A stretch of DNA of 64,000 nucleotides from Macrostomum lignano. Its lineage: Eukaryota. A program made the translations under genes and the position numbers. The stretch lies in contig NIVC01001306.1 in the NCBI GenBank assembly GCA_002269645.1, positions 1-64,000 of the forward strand, read 5' to 3'. This document shows positions 16,906 through 54,120 of this stretch, one piece after another. How positions within the stretch are numbered: the stretch's first letter is position 1; the number at the start of each line of letters is the position of its first letter. The notes under the pieces were generated by a model. That model saw only the letters and a list, made by a program, of their open reading frames with translations, made no database searches and had not been told where the DNA came from.

Positions 16906-17018
16906 AACTCACCCTATTTAATACAAAGGCAATGCATGTCTATTAGTTCAAATCCCAGCTAATCTACTGATAGTAGCATAATAATTTTCCCGCTAAAAAT
17001 AAATAAACAGTCGCTCAC

Positions 17019-17736
17019 TGTGCTGCGCCAGGTACTGCTGGTGCTGCTGGTGAAGGTGCTGATGCTGGTGCTGGGCCGAATGCCCAAAACCGCCGCCAAC
17101 GCCGCCACTGCCGCCGCCTCCGGCCCCGCCGACGCCAGCAACGGCATCGGCGACCTCGTCGTCCTCGTCTGGCCCGTCAGAATCGTCGCCGGCTTCGTCG
17201 TAGCTGCCGCCGTCGTCGTCGGAGTCGACGGGATTGGGCATCGGGTTGGACAGCTGGGCCGCTGACGCTGGGGTGCCGAAGCCAGCTTGCTGCTGATGAA
17301 ATGGCGGCAACTGCTGCTGATGGAGCTGATGATGGGGATACAGGCCTAGCAGAGGCTTAGTGTCGTGATGCTGCTGCTGCTGCTGGCTGGCGACCGCCTC
17401 CTCCTTGACTACTCCAGTTGGACCAGACGATGACTGGAGCTGCTGCTGCTGCTGGTGCGCCGCCGAGGACTTGCCAGTCGGAGCCGATGCTGCCGCAGCT
17501 GCAGCTGCCGCCGCGGCCGCCTGACTACTAGCGAGATTAGCCGGCCAGAAGCGGACATTGCTTGGCCGATTTTGTTGAGCTTTTTTCTTCTTCTGGCTAC
17601 TCTCGGGCGATGAGGCGTCCAGCATCGGTTGGAGGATGCGCCGGCGAGCGTTAATGAACCAGTTGTTCACCTGCAGCAGGGTCAGGTTGGTCTGGCCCGC
17701 CAGCTGCCGCTTCTCGTCCTCGGTCGGGTACGGATG
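17019..17736 (-). CDS. PKNOX: PKNOX/Prep exon 4 (homeodomain helices 2-3 and C-terminal region)
   Basis: [39 protein letters not shown]...[10 protein letters not shown] matches the PKNOX (Prep) TALE class; CAG acceptor at 17737-17739; unspliced, the frame stops at 16993. Confidence 0.93.
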
Positions 17737-21552: not shown

Positions 21553-22301
21553 CAGTGGCTTAGTCAGATGGATTTTCATCTGGGGAGGGGGGTGGTCACG
21601 AGCCAGAGCCACAACACCCGTAGTCAATGCCATTGTGACATAATGTCGGGGAGGGGGGGCAGAGTTCCAGATTCCTGTCAGTAGAACATACTTTAGCGCC
21701 GAATGGAAGATTTTAGCGCCAATTTAGCGCCGAATAAAAGACGTAAGCGCCAATTTAGCGCCGAATGAAAGACTTTAGCGCCAATTTAGCGCCGAATGGA
21801 AGATTTTAGCGCCAATTTAGCGCCGAATGAAAGACTTAAGCGCCAATTTAGCGCCGAATGGAAGATTTTAGCGCCAATTTAGCGCCGAATGAAAGACTTA
21901 AGCGCCAATTTAGCGCCGAATGGAAGATTTTAGCGCCAATTTAGCGCCGAATGAAAGACTTAAGCGCCAATTTAGCGCCGAATGGAAGATTTTAGCGCCA
22001 ATTTAGCGCCGAATGAAAGACTTAAGCGCCAATTTAGCGCCGAATGGAAGATTTTAGCGCCAATTTAGCGCCGAATGAAAGACTTTAGCGCCAATTTAGC
22101 GCCAAATGGAAGATTTGGGCGCCAATTTAGCGCCAAAGTGGACTTACGCGCCAATTTAGCGCCAAAGGCGAGATTTTAGCTTATAAAGTCGTGCCTCGTA
22201 CCACAACCTTTTTCTAACAATTGCAAAAACTAAGACCCAAAATTTTACTGGTCAGCAATCTGGGGGTTGCGACCCCTCTGACCCCCTTGACTACACCACT
22301 G
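21553..22301. mobile_element. hAT-type MITE carrying an internal 31-bp TTTAGCGCC array
   Basis: TIRs CAGTGGCTTAGTCA / TGACTACACCACTG; degenerate 8-bp TSD CAATAACT vs CAATGGTT; array at 21692-22165. Confidence 0.65.
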
Positions 22302-23302
22302 CAATGGTTTCATTTTGTGCCAAATAACTAGCCCGTGTGCGAATATCATCGTATAAAATAGAAAATATGAAGCTACTTCTTAGAATTTTATAAATTACTT
22401 CACAAAAATTCAGTTTGACCAAGCAGAAGTCGAAACTGAGAAAACTTGCAGTCAGCCTGCCTGAAAATGTGTGTTTGGAGAAGAGTTGCTACTCAGGTTT
22501 CGGGTTCGGGGCCGCCACCTTGAACTAGCGTTAGAAACACTGAAGACAGATACCGTCGCACGAGTTACAACTGACTTACTCAAAAACTGTTAAGCCCTAC
22601 AATTCTTCCGATAAGGCGCCCCACCACACTCATCTCCTCGACCAGAGCGAGAATTGATGCCGAAATGATTCAATATTTGTACAAGCCCGTACGCACACAT
22701 ACCCTACTAAGGCATTGCCTCGAGTGTGCAGCCCGCCCCCCTTCCCAGCTAACACGGAGGGAGAAAGAAAGAAAGGATAAAAACCGTGGGCAATTCTCCT
22801 TTACAAGGCGCCATCAGTTTTGAGTTAATTTTCTCAAACAGGCGGCAGAAGAGAGGCAGGGTAGGGAATGAAATTCATATTTTATCACCAAGGCTGACAC
22901 TTCAACACTTGGTGAAGAAGTGTCTCCTAAGCCTAAGACGCGGAGAGCAGCCACTGCTGTATCTGTTTACTTCTCGTCCACTTATCCCAAGCATGCCTAG
23001 CATTGGCAATTGCTCGCAATACACTGCAACTCATCTGCAAGCATTACACATGTTAGATATAGTTAGATTCATGGCCTGGTAGAAACCCCTGATAGATGTT
23101 CTGCATGCTTGTCAATTTAAAAATCCAATTCTAATGCCAATTTCGTTTTAGTCTGCCATATCTATATATTTAGTTGCTAGGGCGAAGAATGTGCTGAAAT
23201 TCCGGCGCGGGAGGTCTGAATAAGTGCGCATGCGTATTTTTTAGCAAGTTTAGCGCGCAAAACCATTATGACCTGTGTGACAATTTTGACTTCAATCACT
23301 AT

Positions 23303-24498
23303 CATGCTTGATTATCAATCTGCGTACGCTTGTGCCGGTGCTTGATTATCAATCTGCGCGCTTGTGCCAGTGCTTGATTATCAATCTGCGCGCTTGTGCC
23401 AGTGCTTGATTATCAATCTGCGCGCTTGTGCCAGTGCTTGATTATCAATCTGCGCGCTTGTGCCAGTGGTTGATTATCAATCTGCGCGCTTGTGCCAGTG
23501 CTTGATTATCAATCTGCGCGCTTTTGCCAGTGGTTGATTATCAATCTGCGCGCTTTTGCCAGTGCTTGATTATCAATCTGCGCGCTTTTGCCAGTGGTTG
23601 ATTATCAATCTGCGCGCTTGTGCCAGTGCTTGATTATCAATCTGCGCGCTTGTGCCAGTGGTTGATTATCAATCTGCGTGCGCTTGTGCCAGTGGTTGAT
23701 TATCAATCTGCGTGCGCTTGTGCCAGTGCTTGATTATCAATCTGCGTGCGCTTGTGCCAGTGCTTGATTATCAATCTGCGTGCGCTTGTGCCGGTGCTTG
23801 ATTATCAATCTGCGCGCTTGTGCCGGTGCTTGATTATCAATCTGCGCGCTTGTGCTAGTGCTTGATTATCGATCTGCGTGCGCTTGTGCCGGTGTTTGAT
23901 TATCAATCCGCGCGCTTGTGCCGGTGCTTGATTATCAATCTGCGTGCGCTTGTGCCGGTGCTTGATTATCAATCTGCGTGCGCTTGTGCCGGTGCTTGAT
24001 TATCGATCTGCGCGCTTGTGCTAGTGCTTGATTATCGATCTGCGTGCGCTTGTGCCGGTGTTTGATTATCAATCCGCGCGCTTGTGCCGGTGCTTGATTA
24101 TCAATCTGCGTGCGCTTGTGCCGGTGCTTGATTATCAATCTGCGTGCGCTTGTGCCGGTGCTTGATTATCGATCTGCGCGCTTGTGCTAGTGCTTGATTA
24201 TCGATCTGCGTGCGCTTGTGCCGGTGTTTGATTATCAATCCGCGCGCTTGTGCCGGTGCTTGATTATCAATCTGCGTGCGCTTGTGCCAGTGCTTGATTA
24301 TCAATCTGCGTGCGCTTGTGCCGGTGCTTGTTTATCAATCTGCGTGCGCTTGTGCCAGTGGTTGATTATCAATCTGCGTGCGCTTGTGCCAGTGCTTGAT
24401 TATCAATCTGCGTGCGCTTGTGCCGGTGCTTGATTATCAATCTGCGTGCGCTTGTGCCGGTGCTTGATTATCAATCTGCGCGCTTGTGCCAGTGCTTG
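23303..24498. repeat. 32/34-bp minisatellite TGCTTGATTATCAATCTGCG(TG)CGCTTGTGCCAG
   Basis: ~35 tandem copies. Confidence 0.96.
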
Positions 24499-26375
24499 AG
24501 CCCTACTGTCCACAGCCGGTGGAAGAGGTGCTGCTGCCTGACGCACATATGCGCCCTGTGGCGCTGTTCATCAAGACCTCTTATAACAGCGTGCTGTGTT
24601 GCCGCTGTTATATGCCAAGAAGCCAAAAAATCACAAAACCAAAATATTTTCGACGCAAAGATTTTTAAGAGTTAAAAAACCTCGAAAAATTGTTTTCAAC
24701 ACTTTGCCAGCAAATATACAAGCTGCAAAAATGTGTCGCAAATTTTTTTTTCTGTCAGAACCATACAGGTCTCTCCCTGACTTCTGTTCATTCCAAACAA
24801 TTTTCCACTTTCCCTGTCAGCTGAACTGCAGCCGCAGGAACACACACGCGCACACAAGCGGACAGATTGAATAGAGAGATTGCCAATCTCTTAACTATAA
24901 CAGCTCCATACACGAGCTATCTGTTGCGGAGGTCCCAACCTCAGCCATCCCCAGGGCAAGCGGGCGCCGCCACACCTTGGGTGGGCAATCCAGCGGCAAG
25001 CAGTAGCCGGGCAAAATGGCTGCTGCAGCTGATCACAGCTTTGCCAGCACAGGAAACAAAACGCTGCGAACAGGCAGGCAACACGGCTTTGGGGGTTGGA
25101 GGCTGCGATCCGGCAAAACAGACGATTAGATTAGAAAAAGAAGAAGACACGCGAAAGAAGAAAGAAGGCAATAGCCTGTTCAAAGCCAGATAGAGACAGA
25201 GAAGTGAAACAGTGAGGCTGCGCTATCCAGTTAGTTTGAAGGGGTGGAGGCAGAATAAGCCATCTGAAGGAAGCCATCAAGACTTTCAGGTGCCCCCGCA
25301 GCCGCCCCTGGCTCACTTTCACTCCTCCGGCTCCTGCCCCTCCTCTCGCGTATCTCCATCGCATAACACAGCTGTGAAATTCTGGCAAGAAAAAGTGAAC
25401 CGAAAGATAAAAATAACCCCCGCTGCTGCCCCGCCGGCCCATCCTCTCCATCCTAGGTGTCCATCAGTCAGAGAGAGAGAGAGAGATGCTTCCATAACTA
25501 TTTTGTATTAGTTTTGCGCCGCCGCAAGCGCAGTTTTTAATGCGATGTCAAGACAGCTTCTTCTCCTTCCTTAGATGCGATGTTTGCGCGCGCTGCTCTC
25601 GCACACTTGGCTTTAGTTATCGATGCCGCAAATCTGTGCCCGGCCCGAACCAAACCAAAGATTTGGTGTCAGCAGCGCCGCGCTGTGGGACCTCTCGTGC
25701 GCGTCTACCTATCAGCCATATATCACTCACACACTCTCTCTCTCACTCTAACATAAGCGTGTTAATAAACCATCTTCCTACCGACCACCTTATAAAGAAA
25801 CCTTGGGGCTCGCAAGATTCCCAGAATCTGATTTCGCGTGTCATATTTTTTCAAGCCGAAGCGCAGGGGAAAAAACCCAGTTATAAAAGCATTTGGCTTT
25901 TAAACCCGTTTTAACATTTGCCGTTTTTTTCTCTCGCACCTCACCTTCAGGCACAGATGCGTAATTAAGCTTTTTTTCTTTTAACAGGAATCTAGTCAAA
26001 CCCTTTGCCACTTAATTTGGTCATTAGGGAGAATTACTTACAACAATTATTCTCTCTATAATTGAATTTGCATCATTGCCTACAGCAAAAAAATCTGAAT
26101 TTTTAGCAGTAGGGAACTACGAATACTATACGAGCGTAGGCTTGAAAAAAATAACTGGGGAGAAAAAGCGCGTAAAGAACTGCTATCATCTGTTGTCATC
26201 TATAAATTTAATGAAGCCAGCCACTGCACTAATTATGCTGTAAACGGGAGCTTGTAAAGGAGCTTTGGGGAATTTCCAGACAATTTAAGGAATATAATTA
26301 CATTCTGACCAGACAATTAATAACTAGCAAACCATTTTGCCAATCTCCGTTCTCAGTCAGTGAACAGAATATTTG

Positions 26376-26870
26376 AGCGCCAATTTAGCGCTAAAAGCGA
26401 GATTTTAGCGCCAAAGATGAGATTTTAGCGCCAACGGTGAGATTTTAGCGCCAAAATGAGATATTAGCGCCAACGATGATATTTTAGCGCCTAAGGTGAG
26501 ATTTTAGCGCCAACCGTCAGATTTTAGCGCCAACGGTAAGATTTTAGCGCCAAAGATGAGATTTTAGCGCCAAAGATGAGATTTTAGCGCCAACAGTGAG
26601 ATTTTAGCGCCAAAGATTAGATTTTAGCGCCAAAGATGAGATTCTAGCGCCAACGGTGAGTTTTTAGCGCCAAAATGAGATTTTAGCGCCAAAATTTGCG
26701 CCAAAGACAAGGTTTTAGCATCAATTTAGCACCAAAATCGAGATTTGAGCGCCAATTTAGCGCCAAATGTGAGATTCTAGCACCAAAGGCGAGATTTCAG
26801 CGCCAATTTAGCGCCAAAAGCAAGATTTTAGCGCCAAAGGCGAGACTTTAGCGCCAGTTTAGCGCCGATA
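26376..26870. repeat. ~20-bp minisatellite GAGATTTTAGCGCCAAAGAT (TTTAGCGCC family)
   Basis: Tandem, moderately diverged copies. Confidence 0.92.
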
Positions 26871-29800
26871 GATTTTTACGTGTACTATCACTATTCTATT
26901 TAAAAATTAATAAAATTAAAACTGAAAAGTTTAACGGTGATATAGCAATTTTTTGTCGTCAAGGGGGTCCTGTTGGTATATGTCTGCCAACCCGGATCCT
27001 AAAAACTATGTCTTTTGCCTATATTATTTGATTCCCAAATTTCTGTCGCGTGTCCACTCATACATGCAAATTCGACTTTCACCTGGCCATTAGAGACAGA
27101 CAGACACCTGAGCGCTACAGGGGTGACCACCAGCAGGTTGAGAGAGAGAGAGAGAGAGAGAGAGGGTGGGGCGGGGCGGGGCGGCGCGGCGCGGCGGGAT
27201 CGCAGTCGCCAACTTTTAATGCCCGACGGACGGACGACAATTCCTTCAATATTTCATCTATGGTTAATGGCTGTTCAACAACATGGGGGAAACGGTTCAC
27301 AGAATCTAGAGCCAAGGCATGCCTAGTCGAATATATTCGATGCATTTTTAATCAGACACTTCACGGACCCGCACCACCACAAGGGGAGGCGGCCTGCAGT
27401 TCCGCTCCTCCCCCATCCGCCACTTTCTCTCTCCCCTGTCGCAGTCGGGGTCCATGCCATAGACAACAGACATCTGGCGCTCCTCTCTGGCTAGAAAGCT
27501 ACTACGGCTAAGGGGCCGCCGCTGCGTTGCGTATAAAATAATATAAACTGCCGGCCAGCGCCTGCCCCGCCTGTCCAGCTTGACTATTTCATATTATTAT
27601 TATTATTACTACATACTATAACTATTTATTATACAGAGAAGACGGTCAACTTGACCATAGGCTAACAATCAAATATAGTTCAATCCCCCTAGTCGTCACC
27701 CAGTTATTAGGAATTAAGACTAACAATATCTGATGGTATTATATCTTTAAAATACTTATAGTTTAGAAAATTCGATTACTCTTAGCTAACCTTTAAGATA
27801 CTCGAGTGTCTACAAGCCATAGGGCACGGCTGAGGAAGTTGGTCCCACTTTCTATCTCTCTAATATATCTGCGTCACAAGTGGGGAGAATTATTGTGCTC
27901 CTCTGTTCTAAGCCCCAATTTGAGAACAATTGAGAACACCATGTCTTACCTTGGCTGGCTACGACTCCGCCCCGCATGCCTTATATTATAGCAAATGCAT
28001 AAATTTATGACACTTATAATCATAACCTAAGACAGCTAGATATGATGATGATGACTCAAGTGGGAGGAGAAGCTGGACATTCAAGTTGATTGCCGTCGGG
28101 CCATCTTAACGACAGACAAACCAATGAGTAGTTTGAGTAGCTATGGAGCTTGCAGAGGCGCTCTAAGTACCCAGAAACTAACAAAGCAACTGTTTACACA
28201 ATTTACATGTTTAATAATCCAAAGTGAAGCATAGGATTGAAGTAAAGAAACAACTGTTCTGCATAAGCAACAGGTGTGGTGGAGTTTACTTGTATTCTGC
28301 CACTAGCGCTTAACTCTCTCAGACTCTATTTTATAATGGCTCTGTGAAGATGAAAATCTTCTTTTTTAAAAGAAGAAAAGATAGAGAATCTATCGAACTG
28401 AGGTAAACAAAGACTTGCACTGTTTACTGACTGTTCATTGATAAAATAGGAACAAAGGATCAAACGCTAGGAATATCTCTATTTCCTAGTGCAATTGATT
28501 GCTTGATAAAAACTTCTATATATGGAGAAAAGCCGTAGCAATACTACAAGAAAATAATAATTAGAGTAGAAAATTCCTAAGCAAACCATGTTGTGATGGC
28601 AGCAAGCGATACAACTGTTGTGAATTAATAGGCGGAGCCCCAGTCGGTCATTAAGGAGAAATCATCGGGCCATGGGGGGTGCAGGGCGATTTTTCTATTT
28701 ATCCCCTAGCCTCTGTAGTGCTAGCACCCCCAATCTATAAAGGGGGTTGGTTGGGTCGGGACAGCGGGGTAGTGCATATTCGAAATGCATTTTCTCTTAC
28801 TAGTAAATGCATATAAGCAGGCGGTGGTAGGGCAGAGTTCCCGCTGCGAAGGACGCTGCGGAATAATATATCCCCGCAGATTCGGCCGCATCAGACCCCA
28901 CCGGTTGAAAGCCCCCGCTTTGCCTTTCTCGACACAGTTAAAAAAAATCTCCCCGCCCCCTCTCCTTTTTGATTCTTTTTAGTGGCCTCACGCCGAGCAA
29001 GCTAAGGGCTCCAAAGCTTTGCCCCGAGAGGTCGCTCGGGGGATCGGGCGGATGGTGCATTTGCGACTTATTGCAGCAAATGCTGAGGAAGCAGAGACGG
29101 GGAGAGATGGGGGGGAGTGGTCGGGTGGCAAGCTGGCAAATTCGGATCCGGGGATAGCTTCAGAGAGAGGACGAGGCGCGCTCCCCCCTCCCAACCCCGC
29201 TCCGCCCCGACCTGCGAGGGCCGCGTCAATCAACTACAGGATTTGGTCGATTTCAAGTGTCAATCAGATTTCGGCTTGGGCCGCCCGACCTACCGATACA
29301 CAAGTCATTAGTTTGGTATACAGAGAGAGGAGGTGAAGAGGGGAGAGTAAGAAGGGAAAGGAGGAGGGGAATGTGGGATTTGGGAAGAGCTGCTGCTGAG
29401 AGGGAGATGGGGAGGAGCAGGCAGTGGGAAAGCGGTGCCCTCAGCGGCTCGAGGCTGAAGAGGCGGCGAGCCAGCATCCAATCCCGTATTCTCAAAAGCT
29501 TTCGCACTATTAAAAGGGCTTAAGTGAGGAGGCTGGAGTAATAATATTATTAAAAAATTGTGTTCAGAATGAGTTAGCAGGTGCCAAAAGCCTCGAGTGG
29601 GTGCGAACTTCAATAAGATGAAATCATCCCCCAAAAAAATCCAGTTTGGCAGGTAAAAACGTAACAGGATAAGGGGTCGGTGTGACAAAAGGTGCAAATT
29701 GATCGGTCCGCTGCTTCCGCAAGTTCATAGGGCGGTTATAATAATTATCGGATCATAGATTTAAAATCATAATTGGCACTCATAAAATTGAATTTTAATT

Positions 29801-30850
29801 GTCTGATTTAATAAGCTAAGCTGAAAATTGGCTGAATTGTTAATGCCTAAAACCAGCCGTCAGAAAAGAATCCATACTCTATTTCACAAGAGCACTGGCC
29901 GAACGGCGCCAGACATCCTGACGCTGTCCAGGCAGGTTGTCAAAAATTGACAAGAACTACTCTGCGCTCGTAGATAAAAATAAAACACGCACCGATACGA
30001 GACACACTGCTGGAGATTAAAAACCGTTTTTAATAATGACAATATACGAATCAGGTAAAGTAAATTTACTTGCAGAAGAAACACACTTAAAGAAGGCCTA
30101 CAAATGAGAAAGATTTCGTGTTGTAAAAAATAGCTAGTGTTTCACAGATAGCGCCCACGCGAACACAGACAGACAGACAGACAGGCTGGCAGGCAGACAG
30201 ACGACAAGGGCAAATGTTTTATAAAATTGTCAAAGCCACTGCGTGCTGGCAACCCGCTGCACTGTGACTTTGCGCTGCCACAGGCCTTAACAACACAACC
30301 TCACTCCGCGACCCCCACTCGAGCCCACAACCCCACCCCTCCAAGCGTTTGATTGACAACCGTTTTACACCTCTTGATAAGGACTCTAGTGGCAGGCACC
30401 CCCTCCCTATCTGGCCTTGCTTCATCACCTCACCTCTCCTCCAGGTGTCAAGAGATGCAGCAAGCCCCTCTATGTGTGTGTCGTTTGGGCCTGGTGAAAC
30501 TGCAGCATATCGCTAGCCAACTAAGAACCATCCCCTGGGGGGAGACACATTACACTACACACGGGGGCTCTACATACCTGTGTGTGAGAGAGCCGGACAG
30601 GCGGTCCCACCTAGGCATTCTTGCCTCCAAGCCTGTGTGTAGAACAAAAAAACACTTTCTCTTCACTATACTGCGCCTTAATAACCTTAATAACCTCTCA
30701 GACTGAAAAACATGAAATCTAATTTCTAACTAACGCTATGAAAATGAAAAAACACGCGTTCTCACACGCTGACTGTTCTGGGAAAAGCTGCTGGGTTTAA
30801 GTTAATGAAAAATGATAGATATGAGACGCATGGAAACTATAATAACTCAC

Positions 30851-31392
30851 CACTAGATGCTGAAATAGCCACTGTTTCATTATCTGCGTAGCGCGTTTCG
30901 GTAAAACGCCGCGTTTCTGCTTGTTTTTATCGTCTAACGAATCTGTTGGACTGCCCAGCTGGTGGTGATGGTGATGGCTGGACTGCTGATGGTGCTGCTG
31001 CTGATGCAGCGGAAGCGGAATATGAGTGCCGCCGCTGCCGCCAGTCGGCATCAAGCCCGGATGGTGGCCGGGCTGTCTGGGCGCCGCTGCCGAGCCGGGA
31101 TATGCATAGTGGGGATAAGCTGGGCCGCCGCTGCCGCCGCCGCTGTGCAGCAGGTGATGATGCTGATGGGCGTGATGATGATCGGGGTACAGGTGCGACG
31201 GGTGGCCACCGTAGAAGCCGTTTTGGCTGCCTCCGTTGCCGGAATGGATGGCCGCTGCTGCTGCTGCGGCGGCCGCCGCGGCCGCTGCCGCCGTCGCGTG
31301 CGGCTGCTGCGAATGCGACTGGCCGCCGGCTGCCGCCGCCGCCGAGGGCGAAGCGTCGCCCGACTCGGAACTGGGCGAATTGGGCATGGAGT
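30851..31392 (-). CDS. PKNOX: PKNOX/Prep exon 3 (linker and homeodomain helix 1)
   Basis: Ends DDKNKQKRGVLPKRATQIMKQWLFQHLV|GTGAGT, joining HPYP; phase 1 in, phase 0 out. Confidence 0.9.
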
Positions 31393-31434
31393 CTGCGGGC
31401 GGCACAGGGCGGGACGGCGGCTCAGGGGAGTTCT

Positions 31435-31695
31435 TAACTGAGGACTCAGGGAGTTCGGACTGAAGACTCAGGGAGTTCGGACTGAAGACTCAGGGAGTTC
31501 GGACTGAAGATTTAGGGCTTTCGATCCATATTTAGGAGTTTGAATTGAAATAGTGCATAGACTAAACTGATCGATCTCAACTAAGCGTAAGAATGGTTTT
31601 AAGTTAAGACTCAAGGGTTTGAGTTGAGACTCAGGGGTTCAATTGAGACTCAGGGGTTTGAATTGAGACTCATGGGTTTGAACTAAGACTCAGGG
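31435..31695. repeat. 20-22-bp GACTCAGGG repeats filling most of the 328-bp prep intron 2
   Basis: GACTCAGGGAGTTCGGACTGAA x3 plus diverged GACTCAGGGGTTTGAATTGA units. Confidence 0.85.
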
Positions 31696-31720
31696 CTTCA
31701 TTAAAAGCGAACACACGCAC

Positions 31721-32166
31721 CGTGCTGCAGAAAGTCGGCTTGCTGATAGCGGCACCGCACGGTATTAATATACCTCGAGCAGAAGTCGCGGCACAATTCA
31801 TTGACCTTCTCCAATTCAATAATGTGAATGCCGAGCACCTGGACAGCTTCGATCATCAGTTGGTCCAAATCCGGGTTGGAGCCGCAGTCTAAACTGCCTC
31901 TGCCGCCGCCGCTGTCGCTGCCAGTTGCAGAGTCTCGCTGTTGCTGCTGCTGCTGCTGCTGCTGGTGCTGCTGCAGAAACGCCTGAACATCGGCGTCAAG
32001 CGACTCCTTGCCAGATGTCTGCGTGTCCAACTGAGCCGTGGACGCCTCGCATCGTTCCAGCACGCTGGCCAGCAGGGGAAACAGAGGGTGCGCGTAGATG
32101 CACTTCTTCTCGCTTTCTTGCTGCGGATGGGCGGCGGCCAGCTCCACGGAGGTCAGAGTTGGGGCG
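31721..32166 (-). CDS. PKNOX: PKNOX/Prep exon 2 (MEINOX/HM1-HM2 PBX-interaction domain)
   Basis: EKKCIYAHPLFPLLASVLERCE and LDQLMIEAVQVLGIHIIELEKVNELCRDFCSRYI; phase 2 in, phase 1 out. Confidence 0.92.
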
Positions 32167-32239
32167 CTGAGAATGCACGGGCGAGCGGCGAGATGTACCG
32201 ATAAATTAAATTCGACACAAATCAGAGAACAGAGGCTTG

Positions 32240-32700
32240 TCACTCTCCGATCTCTCTAGCCGCTAAGTCACTCTCCGATCTCTCTCTAGCCGCTAAGTCA
32301 CTCTCCGATCTATTTAACCGCTAAGTCACTCTCCGATCTCTCTAGCCGCTAAGTCACTCTCCGATCTATTTAACCGCTAAGTCACTCTCCGATCTCTCTA
32401 GCCGCTAAATCACTCTCCGATCTCTCTAGCCGCTAAGTCACTCTCCGATCTCTCTAGCCGCTAAGTCACTCTCCGATCTCTCTAGCCGCTAAGTCACTCT
32501 CCGATCTCTCTCTAGCCGCTAAGTCACTCTCCGATCTATTTAACCGCTAAGTCACTCTCCGATCTCTCTAGCCGCTAAGTCACTCTCCGATCTATTTAAC
32601 CGCTAAGTCACTCTCCGATCTCTCTAGCCGCTAAATCACTCTCCGATCTCTCTAGCCACTAAGTCACTCTCCGATCTCTCTAACCGCTAAGTCACTCTCA
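32240..32700. repeat. 28-bp minisatellite TCTCTAGCCGCTAAGTCACTCTCCGATC
   Basis: ~16 tandem copies. Confidence 0.94.
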
Positions 32701-35700
32701 TATCTATAGAAACACTGCGATACATCGCCACCCCATTGTCACTTATCCTTTCTTTAACTCAATCACGCAACTCTCGTATTTCGAATCGTACAGCGACTTT
32801 TATTGACTAATATTGTCATCCATCTATTAGGCATCTAATAATAATAAGCAAGCGATTTCCCGTCTGTCTCAATTCTGCCACTCAAGATGAAATGATTTTT
32901 AAATAAAGCCGACCCCATCAAATACGAGAGACAATATTAGACAAGAACATGAGACAACCCAAGAACTCTGAGTCCAACCGATTAACCTAGCCGTCACTTA
33001 TTCTCGCTCCTCACTCTACCAAAATATTCTGCCGCAGCGGAATATTCCCAAGCAGACAGTGAAATCTCCATCAACCTGAAAGCAAATCGGGCCTTTCATC
33101 CCGCAGCCTCTTAAAACAGGAAGGAAAATGGGAGCTGGGACAGAGAAAAAGAAGCGCTGAAGTGGGAAGGCGAAATGGAAGGCGATTGACAAGCCGAGAG
33201 TTTGCTTGCTAGGCTTGTCTTTCAAAATTTGAATTTCTTCGTCTGACAGGTAAAACAGAAATGCTAGCACAGAATCCAGCGCCACCTGCTATTGTCACAC
33301 ATCTGTATACTATACTCAAAAATCCATGCTCGCCTCGAAACCCAGCAGAAATTGAAGCGTCAATCAGTTTTTAAAAAGAGAAATTCTTGCCAAAAATACT
33401 TCTAACATTCAGGCAGCCACGATAGAAGACAAAATAAAAAAAAGTAAATGTCTCTAAAACATCATCGGTATGCAGAAAGCAGACAGCAAGAAAGATTTCC
33501 AGACAAAGATAAGCATCAACGCAATGCGGAAGAAACCGTATTGAAATCGTTGGGGATTTCAACAGCTAAATCCCTCGAAAGTTATGATCCCAACCCGGAG
33601 GAACCGAAGGGATGAAGGGCGATTTAGCGGAGTCCGTAGCTTAAGTCCCGATTGATCCCTTAGCCTGAATTGGTTTGTGTAAGGCTTGATGATGCCCCCC
33701 GCTGAAGACTTGCATGCAGCACAAGTGTGTTTTGCGTGTGTGCAGTGTGTGCAATGACTGGCCAAGTATCAATAACACACTCGTTTTACGATTAGTTATT
33801 TATTTCGAATCTACATAGAATTAGTTGTATAAATATAAAACATTGGCAGTTACGTCACTGAATGCAAAGGTCGGAGCAGGAGAGAGAGATAGAGCGGAAT
33901 CTGTCCTTAGACTGTATGGTCCGGATCCCAGTTCAACAGCAGATTACCAATTGTTCCAACCTGACTGTCAGTTCCAATTGCAGCATCTAGATAGGCCTAA
34001 TCAACGGGTCTGTATAGCGCCAGCGGTGACAGATCCTCTTGACTGAATGCTCTAGTAGCTGAATTTGCATCTAACTCCCCGCTTGACCGGGAAAGAAGGG
34101 AGCAAGAATTCGAGAATCCAGATCGAGTGCTGAGGTCCTTGTGAGTTGAGGATAAAGTAGAAGCCTCTTCAGAGGTGTCCATCATCGGACACTCGCCGCC
34201 GCCGGTTGGCGAGGAGACAGGAACCGCCCCCCCCCACACTCCGATCTCGCGGCTATAATAAGGCGGCATTAAGGAGATCGAGTGTCTCTCTTTAACAGCT
34301 AGCGCAAGAGCAGCTCCTTTGGCCTTGCAGCGCGAGTGTAGAAGGCTACTGCTATGGGGGGGGGGCGAGGGCGAGGGGTCAGCTCGACGAGCCTCAGAGA
34401 AGGGAAGTGAAACTTTCTCTTGCTCACCACCCGTTCTCAGCTGGCTCGCCACCCATATCAACAGTGATTGACACCAACTTATAGCGGCTTGCAACGAAGT
34501 GGGGGGTGGAGCTGAGTAGGGGGTCGAAAAGGGCCTCAATTATGAACAAGGCGGGGCTGGCCAATCTCCGCCTTCAAGCCTTGCCCCCCCTCCCGATCCT
34601 GAAAAAGGGATTCTCTATGCAGTGCATGCAGAGGCTCTTTGACTCAACAAGAAACCGAATACTGTTCAAATATTCGCTATGGCAACCCGATTGGTTGAAC
34701 AGACACAAATATTAAAAAATGGCTCAACACTTTACCAACTAACCACTGAGCTCTATTGAAGGCCTCACGGGGAAGGCATAATAATCATTTCTATATATAC
34801 TAATATGATTAGGCCGGTGGCACACACAGACAGAGAAGCCAGCAATAGCACGCAAAGATTAAATTGGGAAGGAATGCTCAGGCAAAAGCACCATACGGTC
34901 AGTAAAAGCACCAACTGTTGCTTTTTAGTATAGTTGGACAGATTAACTATTGGGGAATCAGAATAGCCACACACGCATGCGCTTAGCGGACAATAAGAAT
35001 TAAATAGGACTCGATACCTTTATTGTCCTAAATGAATATATTATTTAGCTTAGTATTAGTATTAGACTGGGTTAGCGGATAGGCAACGGATCGGTGAAGA
35101 GAGAAATGAAAAAGAGAGAGAGAGAGAGAGCACAGCGGGCCTGACAAAGGAGCTTATTGCCGCAGCAGTGGCGGCGGCAGCAATTTGAACAGTCGGGGGT
35201 TGCATGATTCACCAGAGCAGCAGCAGCGGCATAAGCTCTCTCTCTATCTCTCTCTTTCGCATTCTCTTCATATATTCTTCTCTTTCTCTTCTGCATGGCC
35301 TGTCGGGCCGCAACAGGTGTAGCTCCGCGGGGGCGAGGCAGCGAGAGGGGAGCCTTAGAGGGGAGGGGGAGGGAGAAAGCAAAAAACTGGAATTAAGAAG
35401 GGAAGACACGGCCAGACCAGAAGAATTTCGACACTAAAAAGAGAGGCAAGCGATTGCGCCAGGGTTTAACCTGAGGGCGAAGCTCGGAATTGGTATAGAT
35501 GGGCGAAGAAAATGAGGATAGATGCTAATCCCTCCATCCCCAGAATGCTGACTGACCATTTGACCGGGCTGCACACTCTACCCTGCATGTAACTCTTTGA
35601 AATATAACTTTGAAACTGAACATGACAAATATGAGATAGAACTAATATTACCTATTCTGAATAGAAGATATTACTTACCGGTATAAGGCATTTCAAACAG

Positions 35701-35734
35701 CTTAAAGAAGCTTAAAGAATGACGACCAGGTCTG

Positions 35735-36305
35735 AGGATCTTGGATGGTGGAAGTCCAACATGAGGATCTTGGATTGTGGAAGTCCAACATGAGGATCTT
35801 GGATTGTGGAAGTCCAACATGAGCATCTTGGATTGTGGAAGTCCAACATGAGCATCTTGGATTGTGGAAGTCCAACATGAGCATCTTGGATTGTGGAAGT
35901 CCAACATGAGCATCTTGGATTGTGGAAGTCCAACATGAGGATCTTGGATTGTGGAAGTCCAACATGAGCATCTTGGATTGTGGAAGTCCAACATGAGGAT
36001 CTTGGATTGTGGAAGTCCAACATGAGCATCTTGGATTGTGGAAGTCCAACATGAGGATCTTGGATTGTGGAAGTCCAACATGAGGATCTTGGATTGTGGA
36101 AGTCCAACATGAGGATCTTGGATTGTGGAAGTCCAACATGAGGATCTTGGATTGTGGAAGTCCAACAGGAGGATCTTGGATTGTGGAAGTCCAACATGAG
36201 GATCTTGGATTGTGGAAGTCCAACAAGAGGATCTTGGATTGTGGAAGTCCAACATGAGGATCTTGGATTGTGGAAGTCCAACATGAGGATCTTGGATTGT
36301 GGAAG
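35735..36305. repeat. 29-bp minisatellite TGGATTGTGGAAGTCCAACATGAGGATCT
   Basis: ~19 tandem copies. Confidence 0.95.
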
Positions 36306-36309
36306 TCTA

Positions 36310-36550
36310 ATATGAGGATGACCTGAGAGATCTGGGAGGGTGACTGCTCAAGCCTGAAGATCCGGGAGGGTAACTGCTCAAGCCTGAAGATCTGAGAGGG
36401 TGACTGCTCAAACCTGAGGATCTGAGAGAGTGACTGCTCAAACCTGAGGATCTGAGAGAGTGATTGCTCAAACCTGAGGATCTGAGAGAGTGATTGCTCA
36501 AACCTGAGGATCTGGGAGGGTGACTGCTCAAGCCTGAAGATCTGGGAGGG
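36310..36550. repeat. 30-bp minisatellite with GTGACTGCTCAA(G/A)CCTGA(A/G)GATCTG core
   Basis: ~7 copies directly abutting the 29-bp array. Confidence 0.88.
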
Positions 36551-38961
36551 TGTGGTTACTCAGCCTGGAGATTTTGGCGCAAAAACAAAATTATCAATCA
36601 AAATATACTAGTAAAGTCCTAACGATCAGCGCAACTCTCGCTAGTAAATTAGCATGCTCGGCAAGACGACCGTGAATCTGAGGAAGAAGTCCCTCCAACC
36701 CCCATTCCCCGCATAAGACGTCTCAGCCAGGCCGCCCCGAAGCGGCTCTCGACACAAGTCCAACAAAACTTCCACACTCCTCTTATAAAACCCGCTTTTC
36801 CCAAACCACATAAGGGTCCCAGAGAGAGAGGGAGCAGCAGCTATAGCTTTGCGAACCAGATCGGGGCGGGGCTGTCAATCAAGTAGCAAAACTGCGTGCA
36901 TGTGGCCAGCGCAGGTGGTGGTCAGCGTGTGCTGAGAACTGGCAGCAGAGTCTTATCTCCCGCTCTCTCTCTCCCCCCTTTCTTTTATTATTCTTAACTG
37001 CGCGCATAGGCGGAGTCCGAATTGTCTAATAGCTATCTAGAGTGTTGCGTCTGCGTTCTCACCATTTTGGAACAAGAAAGTTTAGTCAGTCAGTCAGTGC
37101 TCAGTAGTATATGCTAAGTATCCCTGGATAATGGTGTCTATCTATTCATTAAAATATGAGCTAGACTTCAATATGTTTTATACTTCACTGTTGTTTCAAC
37201 TACTAGAAAAATGGTATGCACCGCAATAACCCCCAAGGCAGCTCTCTCTAAGTAGTGACTTCTGCTAGCTAGCAGTCATCAATCGAGAATAGTGGCAGAC
37301 AACTCTTGCGCAAGTGGAAGCCAGGGCCAGACTTGTTGCACTTTTTTGTCGTTTTCTGTTATACACTGACTCAGCCACTCAAGCAAATGACAGAGGTCTA
37401 TTTCTTAAGCACTGGTCTCTCCGCCAGATAGGGTAATAAGCTAGAGACATGGCATCGGACAGGACCACTTCACTTTCACCAAGGAGGAGCTGCTCTGTAA
37501 AATTCTTGTTTCGTTGAGAAGACACTTTGGAAAACAGTTCTTTAAAAAAGGTAGAGAAGAGAGGAGAGACCAGAGCAGGCAGCGGAGACAGAAGTCATAG
37601 AGTCAGCATATCGACAATCAACAGGCAAAGTTAGCGACGGTTTTAGCAAAGCGGAAGATGAACCCAACTGGGGTTTTCCCTGGATAGGGGGGGAGAACTT
37701 CGGCGCACCGGGGGTCCTGCACGAGGCTTCCTGTCCGCATGTGCAGCTCCAGTCTTCCTCAGAGAGAGAGAGGAAAAAGGCGAAAGCAGTCCTAATTGAT
37801 TTTAAATTATTTCTATGCTTCTAGCACTCCATTATGACTTGATAACAGGGCCTGATTAAGGTTGAACTGCTTCGTATAAGTTAGGACCGCTTGGGCAGCT
37901 TGGCTAGACGACAACTGACACGCAGTCAGCTGCCACTTGGGGGAGGATAGAAGCGGGCCCAGGGGATAAGGGGACAGTTGCGCTGAAATCCCCAAGGAGA
38001 GAAGAAGGCGCGAAGGAGGAGGCGGAGTTCAAGCAGCAGAAGAAAAAGAAGCAGGACGATACGGAAATCTTTTCCAGAAAAAGCAAGGAGTTTTTAAGCC
38101 TTTAAAGACTAATTCTCCGCAAGCTGCACTCTTGCATCGCAATGAAGGCCATGCCTCTTTTTCCACACACCTGGAGAAACGGAAAATGGGAAAAAAGATA
38201 GAGAAAATTTGGGGAGAAATCAAGAGGCTGGTCCGCGACAGAGAAAGAGAAGATTTTCTCTCTCTTTTTTCATTTGCCTTCTCCCCTTCTCTTCTGGTGC
38301 CAAAAAAATCTAGAGATTGTAAAATCAAATTGCACAGTAACAAGCCGAGCTTTTTTACAACTTAATTTTTCTTTTGAAAGTTGTCTGTGCTTCTTATAAA
38401 TCCTACAGTAGATTCAGTCTGTCTGTATAAACGAGATGATTTTTAATTTAAATAATCGCTACACGCAAGGGAACTGAGAACTATTAAACCGGAGGCATAC
38501 AGAGGGAAAAGTCATCATATCAGTACAGTATGCAGGTAACTTATTAACACAGTATTGTCGCTAAAGTTCGCCATGTAATAACAGCTGTTCCTATCTAGCC
38601 AGCTGGTTTTACTTATATTATATAGAGTAACGGACTGGCAAAGTGTGAAAAGAAGAATTCAAGCTGTTCACCTGAAGCTATCCACCAAGCACACACTGTA
38701 GCACTTTTTGTGCAAAGTTAAGCTAGATAATTAAATACTGATTTTATATACAACTGAAGTTATTCAGTTATATCTACAGATTTTAAGGTCTTGACCCGTG
38801 ACAGTTATACTATGACATCGGCATTACATAATCATATACATGTAAGATAAGATCTGAAAATTCTGAAAAAATACTTCCGCTAAAGACTCTCCTTTCAACT
38901 TCAGCACAATCTACCATTGCACAAAACTAAAAAACACAGGTTGAAACAATGAGCCACTCAC

Positions 38962-39188
38962 TTGTGCAAATCCTGCATTAGGCTATTAGTAGTCGAGGAC
39001 ACCAGATTAACCTGAGTAGAATTACTAATATTGTTGTTGTCTAGTTGTGCCCGGCAGCGCTGTTGTACAGTGCCAGCATCCCGGCGATGATGGGGCAAAC
39101 CTGCGAATGATGATGATGATGATGATAATGGTGATGATGAAGCGGCAACGGGCAATATGGCGCTGCTGTCTTCAGCTTCCTCTTCTTC

Positions 39189-39225
<37 letters not shown>

Positions 39226-39296
39226 AAGCTTCTGCTCCGTCTGCTTTCGCCATCACCAGTGCCGAGCTCAGAATTGGGCGCAGAAGTTGCTGACAT
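38962..39296 (-). CDS. PKNOX: PKNOX/Prep coding exon 1 (Ser-rich N-terminus)
   Basis: ATG at 39296 with an upstream in-frame stop; AA|GTGAGT donor gives the phase 2 needed by exon 2; assigned by phase and proximity only, not by homology. Confidence 0.6.
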
Positions 39297-41183
39297 CACC
39301 GTGGCGTTATGTCATACACAAGAAACTATTTAACAAAATCAAACAGGTTTACAACAGATCAAAGAGCGAGTAAAAGAATCAGGAGATTATGGCTTAAGGC
39401 AACAATTGTGAGTTTATAAAGAAAAACTTTTGTGGTAAAAAATTAGCCAACTATATAAAATATTGTAAAAACTGAGTACAATAAATAAAGATATATATAA
39501 ATTTATACCAGATGTATAAGGCAACTTAGGCGTTGTGCTGAGTGGCTCAGGCGGCAGGCTGCGATCTACACATATAAGGCAAAGAGCGAGATTGTTCCGA
39601 TCAAAAAGTGCAAAAAATATAAATATATAAATTGATTTCAATCGTTAACTACAGCACATCAAAGTGTAGACAAGAAGGGGCGGGCTTGGACAAAAGCCGA
39701 AGCAAAAACAATAGAAAACTTATTTAAACTCGAGCATATGAAAAAGGCCGCCAGAAGTGCAGGAAAGAAGGCGAAAAGCGCCTGTTAAAAAATTGAAGCT
39801 CGCAGTTACAAACAAAAGAAACTTTGCTCTCCAACAGTACTGCAAAATGGATACAGTCGGCAAATCTCTCGGAATTAAAACAGATCCGGCCAGGCATTCA
39901 AAGCCCAGACAGCAGCCTACAGAATGACGCCGATTAGTTAGGCTGCAACAGTTATTGCGAATTATATGCGGTTATGATGAATTACTATAAGATTCATTGC
40001 CTGCAACAACTAGGAGTATAATTTGGACGCTATTCTGCACTTCTTGAATCTGACAGTGCAGCTAACAATTAAGCTTTCTATAGTTGCAGGTTGATGCGCA
40101 AAGATGAGCAGTTTTGCGTAATTTTAAATGACATTTTAAAATAGGCAGACAAAATGAGAAACAGTAGGTTTCGTTTCGTAAGTGAAATTGTGTCAGAAAT
40201 TTAAAAAAATATGGCAGTGGCTGGATATACGAATACAACATTTCTTTGAAAAAAACCTATTTAAACTAATCAATCAAAATTCATCGCGAAAATTTAGCAA
40301 GCTTTGAAATCGTTTCTATAGTAGAGAGCCGTCAATTTTATAATCTATTGAAAGATTGAAAGAGGAATGCCAAAAAGCCGGGGAGAGGCGCAGGGAAACG
40401 AGACCGGAAAGGCCGAACTCCACTCAAGCTCTTTCTTCTTCCTTCACTGACCTGCAGCAATAAGTCTTAATCGCCATTTATGAAAGCTGAAATACCATTG
40501 ATTAGTAAATGAGCGCCACTTGACACACAGAAACTGAATGACCAGCGAAGCTTAAAAGTGATTTTCGATCAATTTTTTTTTGTTCACTCGCAAAGTGAGC
40601 ACAAAAGAGCGCACAGCAACCCATCACAGCGCAGGCTATTCAATATTGTAGCAGCAAGCCATTGACTTGTGAATCAAGTCGGATGGGGCAGCCACGGCCG
40701 TGTCGCCATTTCCGATTTGACTGGACAAAACACGGCTTCCCCCCCTCACAGTACCGGTAGATTTGAGCAACCCGGGCGTCACCAAAAGCATTCTTTGAAG
40801 CCTTGGCAGCCTTACACGCACAAAGCCACACCTGCGCTGGAATGTCCAGAGAGGATGCAGCTCAAATGCTTAACAATGGTAGGCGGAGACTTTCACAGCG
40901 CAGACGCCACTAAGGAGAGACGGAAGAAAAATGAAAAGCAAAGGACTGGAGTTGAAAGGCAAAAAATTAAGAACGGAAACTGGTGGTTCCAGTCCGGAAT
41001 TCTCAGACGGCGCGAAATAGATTATTCAATCTATTCTAATGTACACAAATTGACTTTTTACTATAGACACCGTCAGTGCATGGTGCAAGACTGCTTTTTT
41101 AAATACGGTCTTAACGTATAGATTAAGAATCTGTGTAGTTTTCGCAGCTTGGAATCGAATCGAATCATCGGCTGAAACGACAT

Positions 41184-41217: not shown

Positions 41218-41586
41218 TACGAAAAGATCCAGTTTGGAGAAACACGGACAAGAATTGTCGGGCGCTCACTTACCAAAACAATAGTCGTGAGAAGGCCAAG
41301 TAAGATAGTTTGATACAGCAGTAGTTTTAGTTATAGTTGTAGTAACAACAGAAGCGTCAGAAACTGCCAACCTGACAGGTGAGGTCCGACTCGCACCGGA
41401 GCAAGCATTTAAATGGACAGGTGTTAAAGACCGGCGGTCCGCCATGCCATTTGAGGGGAAGGGGAGGGGTGTGAGAAAGGAGTGGGGAGGAGGAGGCCGA
41501 TGAAAGGCCCCGGGCGCAGAATAATTTGCCAACGCCAACTGGAGTGGCTCGACCGGGTGAGCCCGAAAACGGCCCGACGGCTTGCC

Positions 41587-41706: not shown

Positions 41707-42175
41707 GGCGACTGGGCAGAACATCAAAGCCGACAACACGGCTAGATGGTGAGACTTCCAAGGTCTCGAAGGAACTGACACGATGGGAATCTGTTTCGAA
41801 AGATCGATATCTGCTTTGCAAGCAGACACTTGGTATCCACATACCAACAAACAACATCACATCGTTTTTGAAGAACGAGTTAATTGCTACTTGCTGCCCT
41901 GGTCTCTTTCTAGTAAATATTTGATTTTCTTATAGTTTAAAAGGAATCCGGACCAATTATTTTACTAATACTAATATTTACAATGATTTACTAATAGCAG
42001 CTTTTAAATAGCAAATCTTAGGCGCATGTTTAATAAAGCCTAAATCAGGATCTAAATAGTTTCTAGTTCTAGGATCTTAAATCCTAATAGTTATACTATT
42101 GGATCTCTCAATATTTCTTCCAACATTAATAACAACTGTCTACGGCCCCGACATCCCGCTAAATTTCATAAAACC

Positions 42176-42607
42176 TAAACTTTACAAGACCTAAACTTCA
42201 CAAGACCTAAACTTCACAAGACCTAAACTTCACAAGACCTAAACTTCACAAGACCTAAACTTCACAAGACCTAAACTTCACAAGACCTAAACTTCACAAG
42301 ACCTAAACTTCACAAGACCTAAACTTCACAAGACCTAAACTTCACAAGACCTAAACTTCACAAGACCTAAACTTCACAAGACCTAAACTTCACAAGACCT
42401 AAACTTCACAAGACCTAAACTTCACAAGACCTAAACTTCACAAGACCTAAACTTCACAAGACCTAAACTTCACAAGACCTAAACTTCACAAGACCTAAAC
42501 TTCACAAGACCTAAACTTCACAAGACCTAAACTTCACAAGACCTAAACTTCACAAGACCTAAACTTCACAAGACCTAAACTTCAGAAGACCTAAACTTCA
42601 GAAGACT
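42176..42607. repeat. Near-perfect 16-bp minisatellite AGACCTAAACTTCACA
   Basis: ~26 tandem copies. Confidence 0.96.
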
Positions 42608-53477: not shown

Positions 53478-53577
53478 GTGAGCTTCTGCTCAGGCTGAGT
53501 TTCATATCCGCTGTTAGACTAACCAGAGTTTCCTTTTTAAAAGATAAAACCAATGAGACGCTCAATTTCCCTTGCAG

Positions 53578-54067: not shown

Positions 54068-54081
54068 GTGCGTGCTGCTAC

Positions 54082-54082
<1 letters not shown>

Positions 54083-54119
<37 letters not shown>
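54083..54119. repeat. (GT)n microsatellite 15 nt after the splice donor
   Basis: Direct reading. Confidence 0.92.

Positions 54120-54120
<1 letters not shown>

What the first reader, a model, noticed from the sequence alone, without database searches (positions are those of the whole stretch)
29225..36881. Cluster of PBX-PREP/MEIS binding motifs inside the prep gene itself (candidate autoregulatory module)
Seen: six exact TGATTGAC 8-mers in 7.7 kb of non-repetitive prep intron sequence, at 29225(-), 29259(-), 30350(+), 33359(-), 34465(+) and 36874(-). The last is the full decamer TGATTGACAG next to a GGGGCGGGG box. Near-matches occur at ~19518, ~33183 and ~43478. By eye I found only one other exact copy in the window (2654). 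Uniform-composition expectation for 7.7 kb, both strands, is about 0.25. Established: PBX-PREP/MEIS dimers bind TGANTGACAG, and Prep specifies anterior fate in planarians. Inference: a TALE feedback loop maintaining prep expression. The interval was chosen post hoc.
Basis: partly seen in the sequence, partly recalled or inferred. Interest (0 to 1): 0.7.

Follow-up and report, generated by a model that had tools for sequence, protein, structure and literature searches.

The report
TALE motif cluster in flatworm prep
Six exact copies of the DNA word bound by Pbx–Prep/Meis proteins sit in the introns of the Macrostomum lignano prep gene, far more than chance predicts, which makes a plausible but untested feedback element.

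Summary
TGATTGAC occurs at all six stated positions and strands, against 0.22–0.34 expected. The scan-statistic p for a pre-specified motif is about 1e-5 to 4e-4. It is the only one of 1,680 same-composition 8-mers with 5 or more copies in any 7.66-kb span. The sites lie in unique sequence and their flanks are unrelated.

- There are two outside copies (549 and 2654), not one.
- The interval is not plain non-repetitive intron: it holds two coding exons (988 bp) and 1,478 bp of tandem arrays.
- The organism is Macrostomum lignano, a macrostomid flatworm and not a planarian.

The gene is a genuine PKNOX/Prep orthologue on the minus strand, and its recognition helix is identical to human PKNOX1.

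Caveats: only one site is the full decamer TGATTGACAG. The TGACAG half-site and one-mismatch variants are not enriched. No site has the vertebrate DECA–11 bp–CCAAT geometry. Eight outgroup PKNOX loci show no cluster. Homeologue and sister-species conservation could not be retrieved.

Best reading (about 0.5): intronic Pbx–Prep/Meis sites that put prep under TALE auto- or cross-regulation, a kind already known in mouse. The sign of the feedback and the partner protein are unknown. Interest is moderate.

The parts
29225..29232 (-). DECA core TGATTGAC (extended TGATTGACGC). Lies in the 13-kb intron between exons B and C, 1.6 kb downstream of exon B.
29259..29266 (-). DECA core TGATTGAC (extended TGATTGACAC). 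Lies 34 bp from the previous site in the same orientation.
30350..30357 (+). DECA core TGATTGAC (extended TGATTGACAA). Lies 494 bp downstream of exon B in the same intron.
30331..30338 (+). Sp/KLF-type box CCCCACCC, starting 19 bp before the 30350 site. One of only 11 such boxes in the window.
33359..33366 (-). DECA core TGATTGAC (extended TGATTGACGC). Lies 1.2 kb upstream of exon A in the intron between exon -1 and exon A.
34465..34472 (+). DECA core TGATTGAC (extended TGATTGACAC). Lies 2.3 kb upstream of exon A.
36872..36881 (-). The only full decamer, TGATTGACAG. Lies 4.7 kb upstream of exon A and 2.1 kb downstream of the exon -1 donor.
36863..36871 (+). GC box GGGGCGGGG directly abutting the decamer.
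31721..32166 (-). prep exon A, encoding the Meis_PKNOX_N (HM) domain. Canonical AG acceptor and GT donor.
30851..31392 (-). prep exon B, encoding a low-complexity Q/H/A-rich linker and the start of the homeodomain.
16993..17736 (-). prep exon C, encoding the rest of the homeodomain (WFINARRR), the C-terminal tail and the stop codon.
38964..39101 (-). prep upstream exon (-1) according to the UniRef M. lignano model P0004. Canonical splice sites.
41272..41418 (-). prep upstream exon (-2) according to P0004. This is a predicted, partial model.

Best explanation
The six sites are binding sites for TALE heterodimers, with Pbx on the TGAT half and Prep or Meis on the TGAC half. They form two intronic regulatory modules in the M. 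lignano prep gene. One module has three sites within 1.13 kb, 0.5-1.6 kb downstream of exon B. The other is a looser set 1.2-4.7 kb upstream of exon A, and its most upstream member is a full decamer fused to a GC box. Binding would place prep transcription under TALE control, meaning autoregulation by Pbx-Prep and/or cross-regulation by Pbx-Meis, possibly helped by Sp/KLF factors at the adjacent GC boxes. Shown here: the sites exist, are independent and are over-represented; the gene is prep; its recognition helix is identical to human PKNOX1. Inferred: occupancy, enhancer activity, which gene is regulated, and the sign of the feedback.
For: There are 6 sites against 0.22-0.34 expected. The scan P for a pre-specified motif is 1.4e-5 to 4.5e-4. 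It is the only one of 1,680 composition-matched 8-mers with 5 or more copies in 7.66 kb. The sites lie in unique DNA with unrelated flanks, so they are not copies of one element. Four sites are sense and two antisense to the gene, which fits a DNA-level rather than RNA-level element. The encoded homeodomain matches the human PKNOX1 homeodomain (1x2n, E 4.8e-32), with helix 3 [17 protein letters not shown] identical. The literature gives TGATTGACAG as the Pbx-Prep DECA site, with GAnnGAC as the conserved core in vivo, and all six sites keep that core. A CC(C/A)C(G/A)CCC Sp/KLF motif co-occurs with DECA at zebrafish Prep peaks. Here 2 of the window's 11 such boxes start within 20 bp of a site, against about 0.05 expected, although that threshold was chosen post hoc. 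TALE proteins occupy validated enhancers at TALE genes in mouse (PMC5580710).
Against: Only 1 of 6 sites has the canonical Prep half-site TGACAG; the others end AC, AC, AA, GC and GC. TGACAG alone (4 observed, 3.2 expected) and one-mismatch variants (8 observed, about 6 expected in the interval; 59 observed, about 53 expected window-wide) are not enriched, whereas natural homotypic clusters usually include weaker sites. No site has the DECA-11 bp-CCAAT geometry typical of vertebrate Prep-Pbx sites. Eight outgroup PKNOX loci (about 227 kb) carry 12 sites against about 10.8 expected, and never more than 2 per 7.66 kb. There is no conservation, chromatin or expression evidence. The interval and motif were picked by a reader scanning many windows, which adds a selection effect. 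Across all 8-mers, clusters of this size are common.
Confidence: 0.5

Rival explanations
1. Chance coincidence. An ordinary 8-mer happens to cluster here and happens to be the TALE site. It was picked up because the reader recognised the gene and looked for that word.
For: Random order-3 Markov sequences of this size contain about 10.7 8-mers (about 0.5 complex ones) with at least 6 copies in 7.66 kb. In the real window 25 8-mers reach that level. Only exact matches are enriched, with no halo of weaker variants or half-sites. Five of six sites lack the canonical AG end. No cluster appears in eight outgroup loci. A post hoc promoter-proximal pattern in the outgroups failed its hold-out test, which shows how easily such patterns arise.
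Against: For this one pre-specified word the scan P is 1e-5 to 4e-4. It ranks first of 1,680 composition-matched words. Allowing about 10 TALE-type words still leaves roughly 1e-4 to 5e-3. GC boxes adjoin two of the sites.
Confidence: 0.2
2. The sites are real regulatory sites but do not form a prep feedback loop. They could be read by another factor with overlapping specificity. Or they could be TALE-bound elements serving another purpose, for example an alternative or internal promoter of GC-box plus DECA type near 36.8 kb, an unannotated transcript, or long-range control of a neighbouring gene.
For: Vertebrate Prep-Pbx DECA sites are found at many genes, not just TALE genes, together with Sp/KLF and NF-Y motifs. 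The full decamer is fused to a GC box, with TATA-like sequence about 85-95 bp away (TTATAAAA at about 36,785). G- or C-runs flank 4 of the 5 independent site positions. Sequence cannot assign an enhancer to its target gene.
Against: All six sites lie inside the prep transcription unit and bracket its HM and homeodomain exons. The nearest other genes are more than 10 kb away. No other factor is known to prefer exactly TGATTGAC; this rests on my own knowledge and is not a test.
Confidence: 0.25
3. The sites are remnants of a dispersed repeat, transposon end or local duplication that carried the 8-mer.
For: About 20% of the window is tandem arrays, and M. lignano introns here are repeat-rich. Two sites lie only 34 bp apart.
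Against: No direct or inverted repeat family includes any site. Core-masked flanks of 250 bp on each side align no better than random unique segments, 22.3 bits against a control mean of 26.3 and maximum of 38.2. No tandem-array unit contains the word.
Confidence: 0.03

Closest known systems
Vertebrate DECA sites (TGATTGACAG) bound by Prep-Pbx dimers (zebrafish blastula, mouse ES cells; PMC6023610; bioRxiv 10.64898/2026.02.16.706105)
   Same: The 8-bp core is identical at all six sites and one site is the full decamer. The in vivo conserved core GAnnGAC is kept. An Sp/KLF-type GC box lies next to two sites, matching the co-motif reported at zebrafish Prep peaks.
   Different: None has the constrained DECA-11 bp-CCAAT (NF-Y) geometry. 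Five of six lack the terminal AG. The flatworm arrangement is a homotypic cluster spread over introns. Occupancy is untested.
Auto- and cross-regulatory enhancers at mouse TALE genes such as Meis1/2/3, Pbx1 and Tgif2 (De Kumar et al. 2017, PMC5580710)
   Same: TALE-type sites within or near a TALE gene, which implies network feedback.
   Different: The mouse elements were defined by ChIP-seq, chromatin marks and zebrafish reporter assays, and were found as HOXA1-bound regions. Here there is only sequence, and TGACAG half-sites are not enriched.
Hoxb1 autoregulatory element dependent on exd/Pbx (Popperl et al. 1995, listed in the references of PMC5580710; details from my own knowledge)
   Same: Several copies of a bipartite Pbx-partner site driving feedback on the partner's own gene.
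   Different: Those are Pbx-Hox sites (TGATNNAT) in one compact, deeply conserved 5' enhancer. These are Pbx-Prep/Meis-type sites scattered over 7.7 kb with no demonstrated conservation.
Smed-prep of the planarian Schmidtea mediterranea (PMC2858555)
   Same: Orthologous TALE gene in another flatworm.
   Different: A different order of flatworms. As far as I found, no cis-regulatory elements of Smed-prep are described, and no prep function is reported for M. lignano in the papers searched.

Membership tests
PKNOX/Prep TALE homeobox gene | N-terminal MEINOX (Meis_PKNOX_N) domain | tested here: met
   PF16493, E 4.3e-27, 95 bits against a cutoff of 27
PKNOX/Prep TALE homeobox gene | TALE homeodomain with the WFINARRR recognition helix | tested here: met
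   PF05920, E 1.3e-20. Helix 3 is identical to the human PKNOX1 structure 1x2n.
PKNOX/Prep TALE homeobox gene | Closer to PKNOX than to MEIS | tested here: met
   The best-scoring named hits are PKNOX1/2. The PKNOX1 homeodomain scores 112 bits against 102 bits for MEIS. No phylogeny was made.
DECA (Pbx-Prep/Meis) binding site | 10-bp TGATTGACAG with adjacent Pbx (TGAT) and Prep/Meis (TGACAG) half-sites | tested here: inconclusive
   The full decamer is present at 1 of 6 sites. The 8-bp core and the in vivo core GAnnGAC are present at 6 of 6. Positions 9-10 are AC, AC, AA, GC and GC at the other five.
DECA (Pbx-Prep/Meis) binding site | Occupancy by Pbx and Prep/Meis in vivo or binding in vitro | not testable with these tools
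   No ChIP, ATAC or EMSA data are accessible here. M. lignano single-nucleus ATAC data exist (PMC11398382).
DECA-CCAAT-Sp2 composite element | GAnnGAC-11 bp (10-12)-CCAAT geometry | tested here: not met
   A regex scan with spacers of 9-13 bp on both strands found no match anywhere in the window. The only CCAAT within 150 bp of a cluster site is at +96.
TALE auto-/cross-regulatory enhancer | Over-representation of TALE sites within a TALE gene locus | tested here: met
   6 sites against about 0.3 expected, scan P 1e-5 to 4e-4, and rank 1 of 1,680 matched words
TALE auto-/cross-regulatory enhancer | Evolutionary conservation of the sites | tested here: inconclusive
   Close relatives were not retrievable. 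Eight distant PKNOX loci show no cluster, which is uninformative about a lineage-specific element.
TALE auto-/cross-regulatory enhancer | Enhancer activity and dependence of the gene on Pbx/Prep | not testable with these tools
   Requires reporter transgenesis and RNAi.

The most novel reading that the evidence does not exclude
A lineage-specific homotypic cluster of Pbx-Prep sites inside prep forms a positive-feedback switch that locks in prep expression, and with it regional (anterior) identity, in a regenerating flatworm. It would be the first defined cis-regulatory feedback element of a flatworm positional-control gene. It sits in the one flatworm where reporter transgenesis can test it.
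Probability: 0.2. Interest if true: 0.6.

Novelty: new member of a known kind. Interest (0 to 1): 0.4.

Why it matters
How flatworm positional-control genes such as prep are kept on in the right region during homeostasis and regeneration is largely unknown at the level of cis-regulatory DNA. If these sites are functional, they give a compact, mutable candidate enhancer set and a simple circuit (TALE feedback). To my knowledge M. lignano is the only flatworm with routine transgenesis, so the test is feasible there. It would also show DECA-type Pbx-Prep sites working outside vertebrates and without the NF-Y (CCAAT) partner geometry. If they are not functional, this is a useful warning about motif coincidences in single windows.

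Tried and rejected
1. Conservation in M. lignano homeologues or sister species was not possible. The only close protein, P0004 (UniRef), has no contig on record. No other Macrostomum relative appeared with the HM+HD query or with exon C plus the lineage-specific tail. A metagenome scan found nothing.
2. Same-genome background beyond the window was not obtainable for the same reason. The 56 kb outside the interval (2 sites) served as the local background.
3. Deep conservation: I fetched PKNOX loci of Capitella, Lineus, Tubulanus, Mytilus, Haliotis, Argopecten, Lingula and Parasteatoda. They carry 12 sites against about 10.8 expected, and never more than 2 per 7.66 kb.
4. A post hoc lead was rejected. 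In the first five loci a site always lay within -3.3 to +1.5 kb of the gene start. I pre-registered a window of -3.5 to +2.5 kb, and 0 of 3 new loci had a site there (the Lingula locus is one-third N).
5. The vertebrate DECA-CCAAT composite is absent.
6. The hidden repeat or transposon origin was rejected.
7. There is no enrichment of the TGACAG half-site, of TGAT or TGAC, or of one-mismatch variants.
8. No extra shared word occurs in the flanks of the sites beyond G/C runs: no 7-mer is shared by three or more sites.
9. Three look-ups (P0016, P0039, P0018) found no gene on record. One DNA search failed on pattern syntax and was replaced by a regex.


Full report
**What is in the sequence.** A pattern search finds TGATTGAC eight times in the 64-kb window. 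The sites are 549+, 2654+, 29225-, 29259-, 30350+, 33359-, 34465+ and 36874-. Only 36872-36881(-) is the full decamer TGATTGACAG. The other five continue AC, AC, AA, GC and GC. GGGGCGGGG at 36863-36871 abuts the decamer.

**What the locus is.** The window is eukaryotic, about 46% G+C, and roughly 20% of it is minisatellite arrays. A TALE homeobox gene lies on the minus strand.
- Exon A (32166-31721) encodes a Meis_PKNOX_N domain.
- Exon B (31392-30851) encodes a Q/H/A-rich linker and the start of the homeodomain.
- Exon C (17736-16993) encodes the rest of the homeodomain (…[14 protein letters not shown]…), a tail and the stop codon.
- All junctions are canonical AG/GT.

The best-scoring named protein hits are PKNOX1/2. 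One UniRef entry from Macrostomum lignano (P0004) is 100% identical and adds two upstream exons at 39101-38964 and 41418-41272. The homeodomain matches the solved human PKNOX1 homeodomain (1x2n, E 4.8e-32) with an identical recognition helix. A conserved TGACAG-type specificity is therefore a fair inference.

With the P0004 model, all six sites are intronic. Three lie 0.5-1.6 kb downstream of exon B in the 13-kb intron. Three lie 1.2-4.7 kb upstream of exon A. The interval as a whole is not 'non-repetitive intron': it includes 988 bp of coding exon and 1,478 bp of tandem arrays, leaving 5,191 bp.

**Is it more than chance?**
- Dinucleotide shuffles of the window give 2.14 ± 1.55 sites, and none of 100 shuffles reaches 8.
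- Markov models of order 1-5 trained outside the interval predict 0.22-0.33 sites per 7,657 bp, against 6 observed.
- A scan statistic lets the 7,657-bp span fall anywhere. It gives P = 1.4e-5 to 4.5e-4 for background rates of 2.2-4.0 per window.
- Counting the 34-bp pair as a single event gives 2.9e-4 to 2.4e-3.
- I tested all 1,680 strand-collapsed permutations of the same eight letters as an empirical, composition-matched null. GTCAATCA is the only one with 5 or more copies in any 7.66-kb span, and the next best have 4.
- The sites are independent events. No direct or inverted repeat family contains them. With the core masked, their 250-bp flanks align no better than random unique segments.

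The caveat matters. If one looks at all 8-mers, clusters of this size are expected. Random order-3 Markov sequences give about 10.7 such words, of which about 0.5 are compositionally complex. The real window has 25, nearly all low-complexity. The evidence therefore rests on the word being the TALE site inside a TALE gene.

**Does the rest of the sequence behave like a TALE module?** Partly.
- For: the literature defines TGATTGACAG as the Pbx-Prep DECA site, with Pbx on the 5' half (PMC6023610).
- For: a 2026 preprint gives GAnnGAC as the conserved core in vivo, and all six sites keep it.
- For: zebrafish Prep peaks carry a CC(C/A)C(G/A)CCC Sp/KLF co-motif. Here only 11 such boxes exist in 64 kb, and two start within 20 bp of a site (30331 and 36864). 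About 0.05 would be expected, though I chose the distance threshold post hoc.
- Against: the Prep/Meis half-site TGACAG is not enriched (4 observed, 3.2 expected). TGAT and TGAC are not enriched either.
- Against: one-mismatch variants are not enriched, with 8 observed against about 6 expected in the interval.
- Against: no site has the DECA-11 bp-CCAAT geometry that characterises vertebrate Prep-Pbx/NF-Y/Sp2 elements.
- Against: beyond G/C runs, no further word is shared among the flanks.

**Related sequences.** I could not retrieve the M. lignano homeologue or any sister-species locus. P0004 has no contig on record. Neither protein query found another Macrostomum relative. The metagenome scan was empty.

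As a distant test I fetched PKNOX loci from eight other invertebrates, about 227 kb in all. They hold 12 sites against about 10.8 expected, and never more than two in 7.66 kb. In the first five loci a site always lay near the gene start. I wrote down a fixed window before fetching three more loci, and none of them had a site there. That lead is dropped. If the M. lignano cluster is functional, it is lineage-specific.

**Mechanism.** The best-supported reading is that Pbx-Prep/Meis heterodimers bind these cores. The two intronic modules would then place prep under TALE control. This is the same kind of circuit documented by ChIP and reporter assays for mouse TALE genes (PMC5580710). I give this 0.5. 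Sequence cannot tell Prep from Meis as the partner, nor activation from repression. Rivals are:
- real sites with another reader or another target, including a GC-box plus DECA promoter-like element at 36.8 kb (0.25);
- pure coincidence (0.2);
- repeat origin (0.03, effectively excluded).

**Novelty and interest.** TALE feedback on TALE genes and DECA sites are both known, so this would be a new member of a known kind: the first such element proposed in a flatworm. It is a prediction from one window without conservation or chromatin support. A specialist would find it reasonable rather than surprising. Its value is that it is cheaply testable. M. lignano single-nucleus ATAC data and the M. cliftonense and M. 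hystrix assemblies already exist (PMC11398382 and PMC10468722), and to my knowledge the species supports reporter transgenesis. Interest is 0.4.

Noticed in passing
window 5332-9234 (-): An uninterrupted 1,300-aa gag-pol ORF of a Ty3/gypsy-type LTR retrotransposon, with aspartyl protease, RT, RNase H and integrase domains. Because the ORF is intact, it may be a young or active element. LTRs and copy number were not examined.
   Followed up: partly
window 9546-9871 and 9897-10277: Two adjacent minisatellite arrays whose 16-nt units are reverse complements of each other (TTCACAAGATCGAAAT and TTTCGACCTTGTGAAA). Together they form a large imperfect palindrome of about 700 bp. Related CTTGTGAA/TTCACAAG-type 16-mers recur at 19822-20735 and 42159-42606.
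   Followed up: no
window 17931-26866 (prep 13-kb intron): Five separate minisatellite arrays with units of 16-62 nt fill much of the intron. Arrays built on TTTAGCGCCAA occur twice (21692-22180 and 26384-26866). Even the 328-bp intron between exons A and B consists largely of 20-22-nt arrays (31421-31695), and a 28-nt array (32239-32699) starts 73 bp upstream of exon A.
   Followed up: no
window 1403-2041 (-) and 891-1546: An exon encoding a RILP-homology RH1 domain (PF09744, E 3.7e-27). Its ORF runs into a (GACA)n microsatellite of about 164 copies.
   Followed up: partly
window 11067-11753 (+): The terminal exon of an EB1/MAPRE-type microtubule end-binding protein (EB1 C-terminal motif, E 3.5e-13, ending in EEY).
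   Followed up: partly
window 53572-56269 (+) and 62015-63088 (-): An ionotropic glutamate-receptor-like exon (Lig_chan-Glu_bd, E 3e-23) at 53572-54150. The ORFs at 55571-56269 and 62475-63088 look related to each other by eye, but Pfam found no family in either. The minus-strand ORF reads in frame through a perfect (AGAT)106 microsatellite at 62049-62474.
   Followed up: partly
window 38958-39299 (-): The reading frame of upstream exon -1 stays open 5' of the P0004 acceptor, back to a GTG-ATG start (MMSATSAPN…). The real first coding exon may therefore begin near 39.3 kb rather than splice from 41.3 kb. The true TSS is unknown, and this affects how promoter-proximal the 36.87-kb decamer is.
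   Followed up: no
L005 7824 and 7890 (Haliotis cracherodii); L002 11463 (Lineus longissimus): Haliotis has two same-strand DECA cores 66 bp apart, one of them a full decamer, about 2.1 kb upstream of its pknox gene. Lineus has a full decamer 1.5 kb inside its gene. The apparent promoter-proximal pattern across five loci failed a pre-registered hold-out test on three more.
   Followed up: yes
window 30851-31392 (-), exon B, and 16993-17500 (-): M. lignano Prep carries long poly-A, poly-Q and His-rich tracts between the HM domain and the homeodomain and in the C-terminal tail. These inflated similarity scores to unrelated low-complexity PKNOX models (the top three hits).
   Followed up: no
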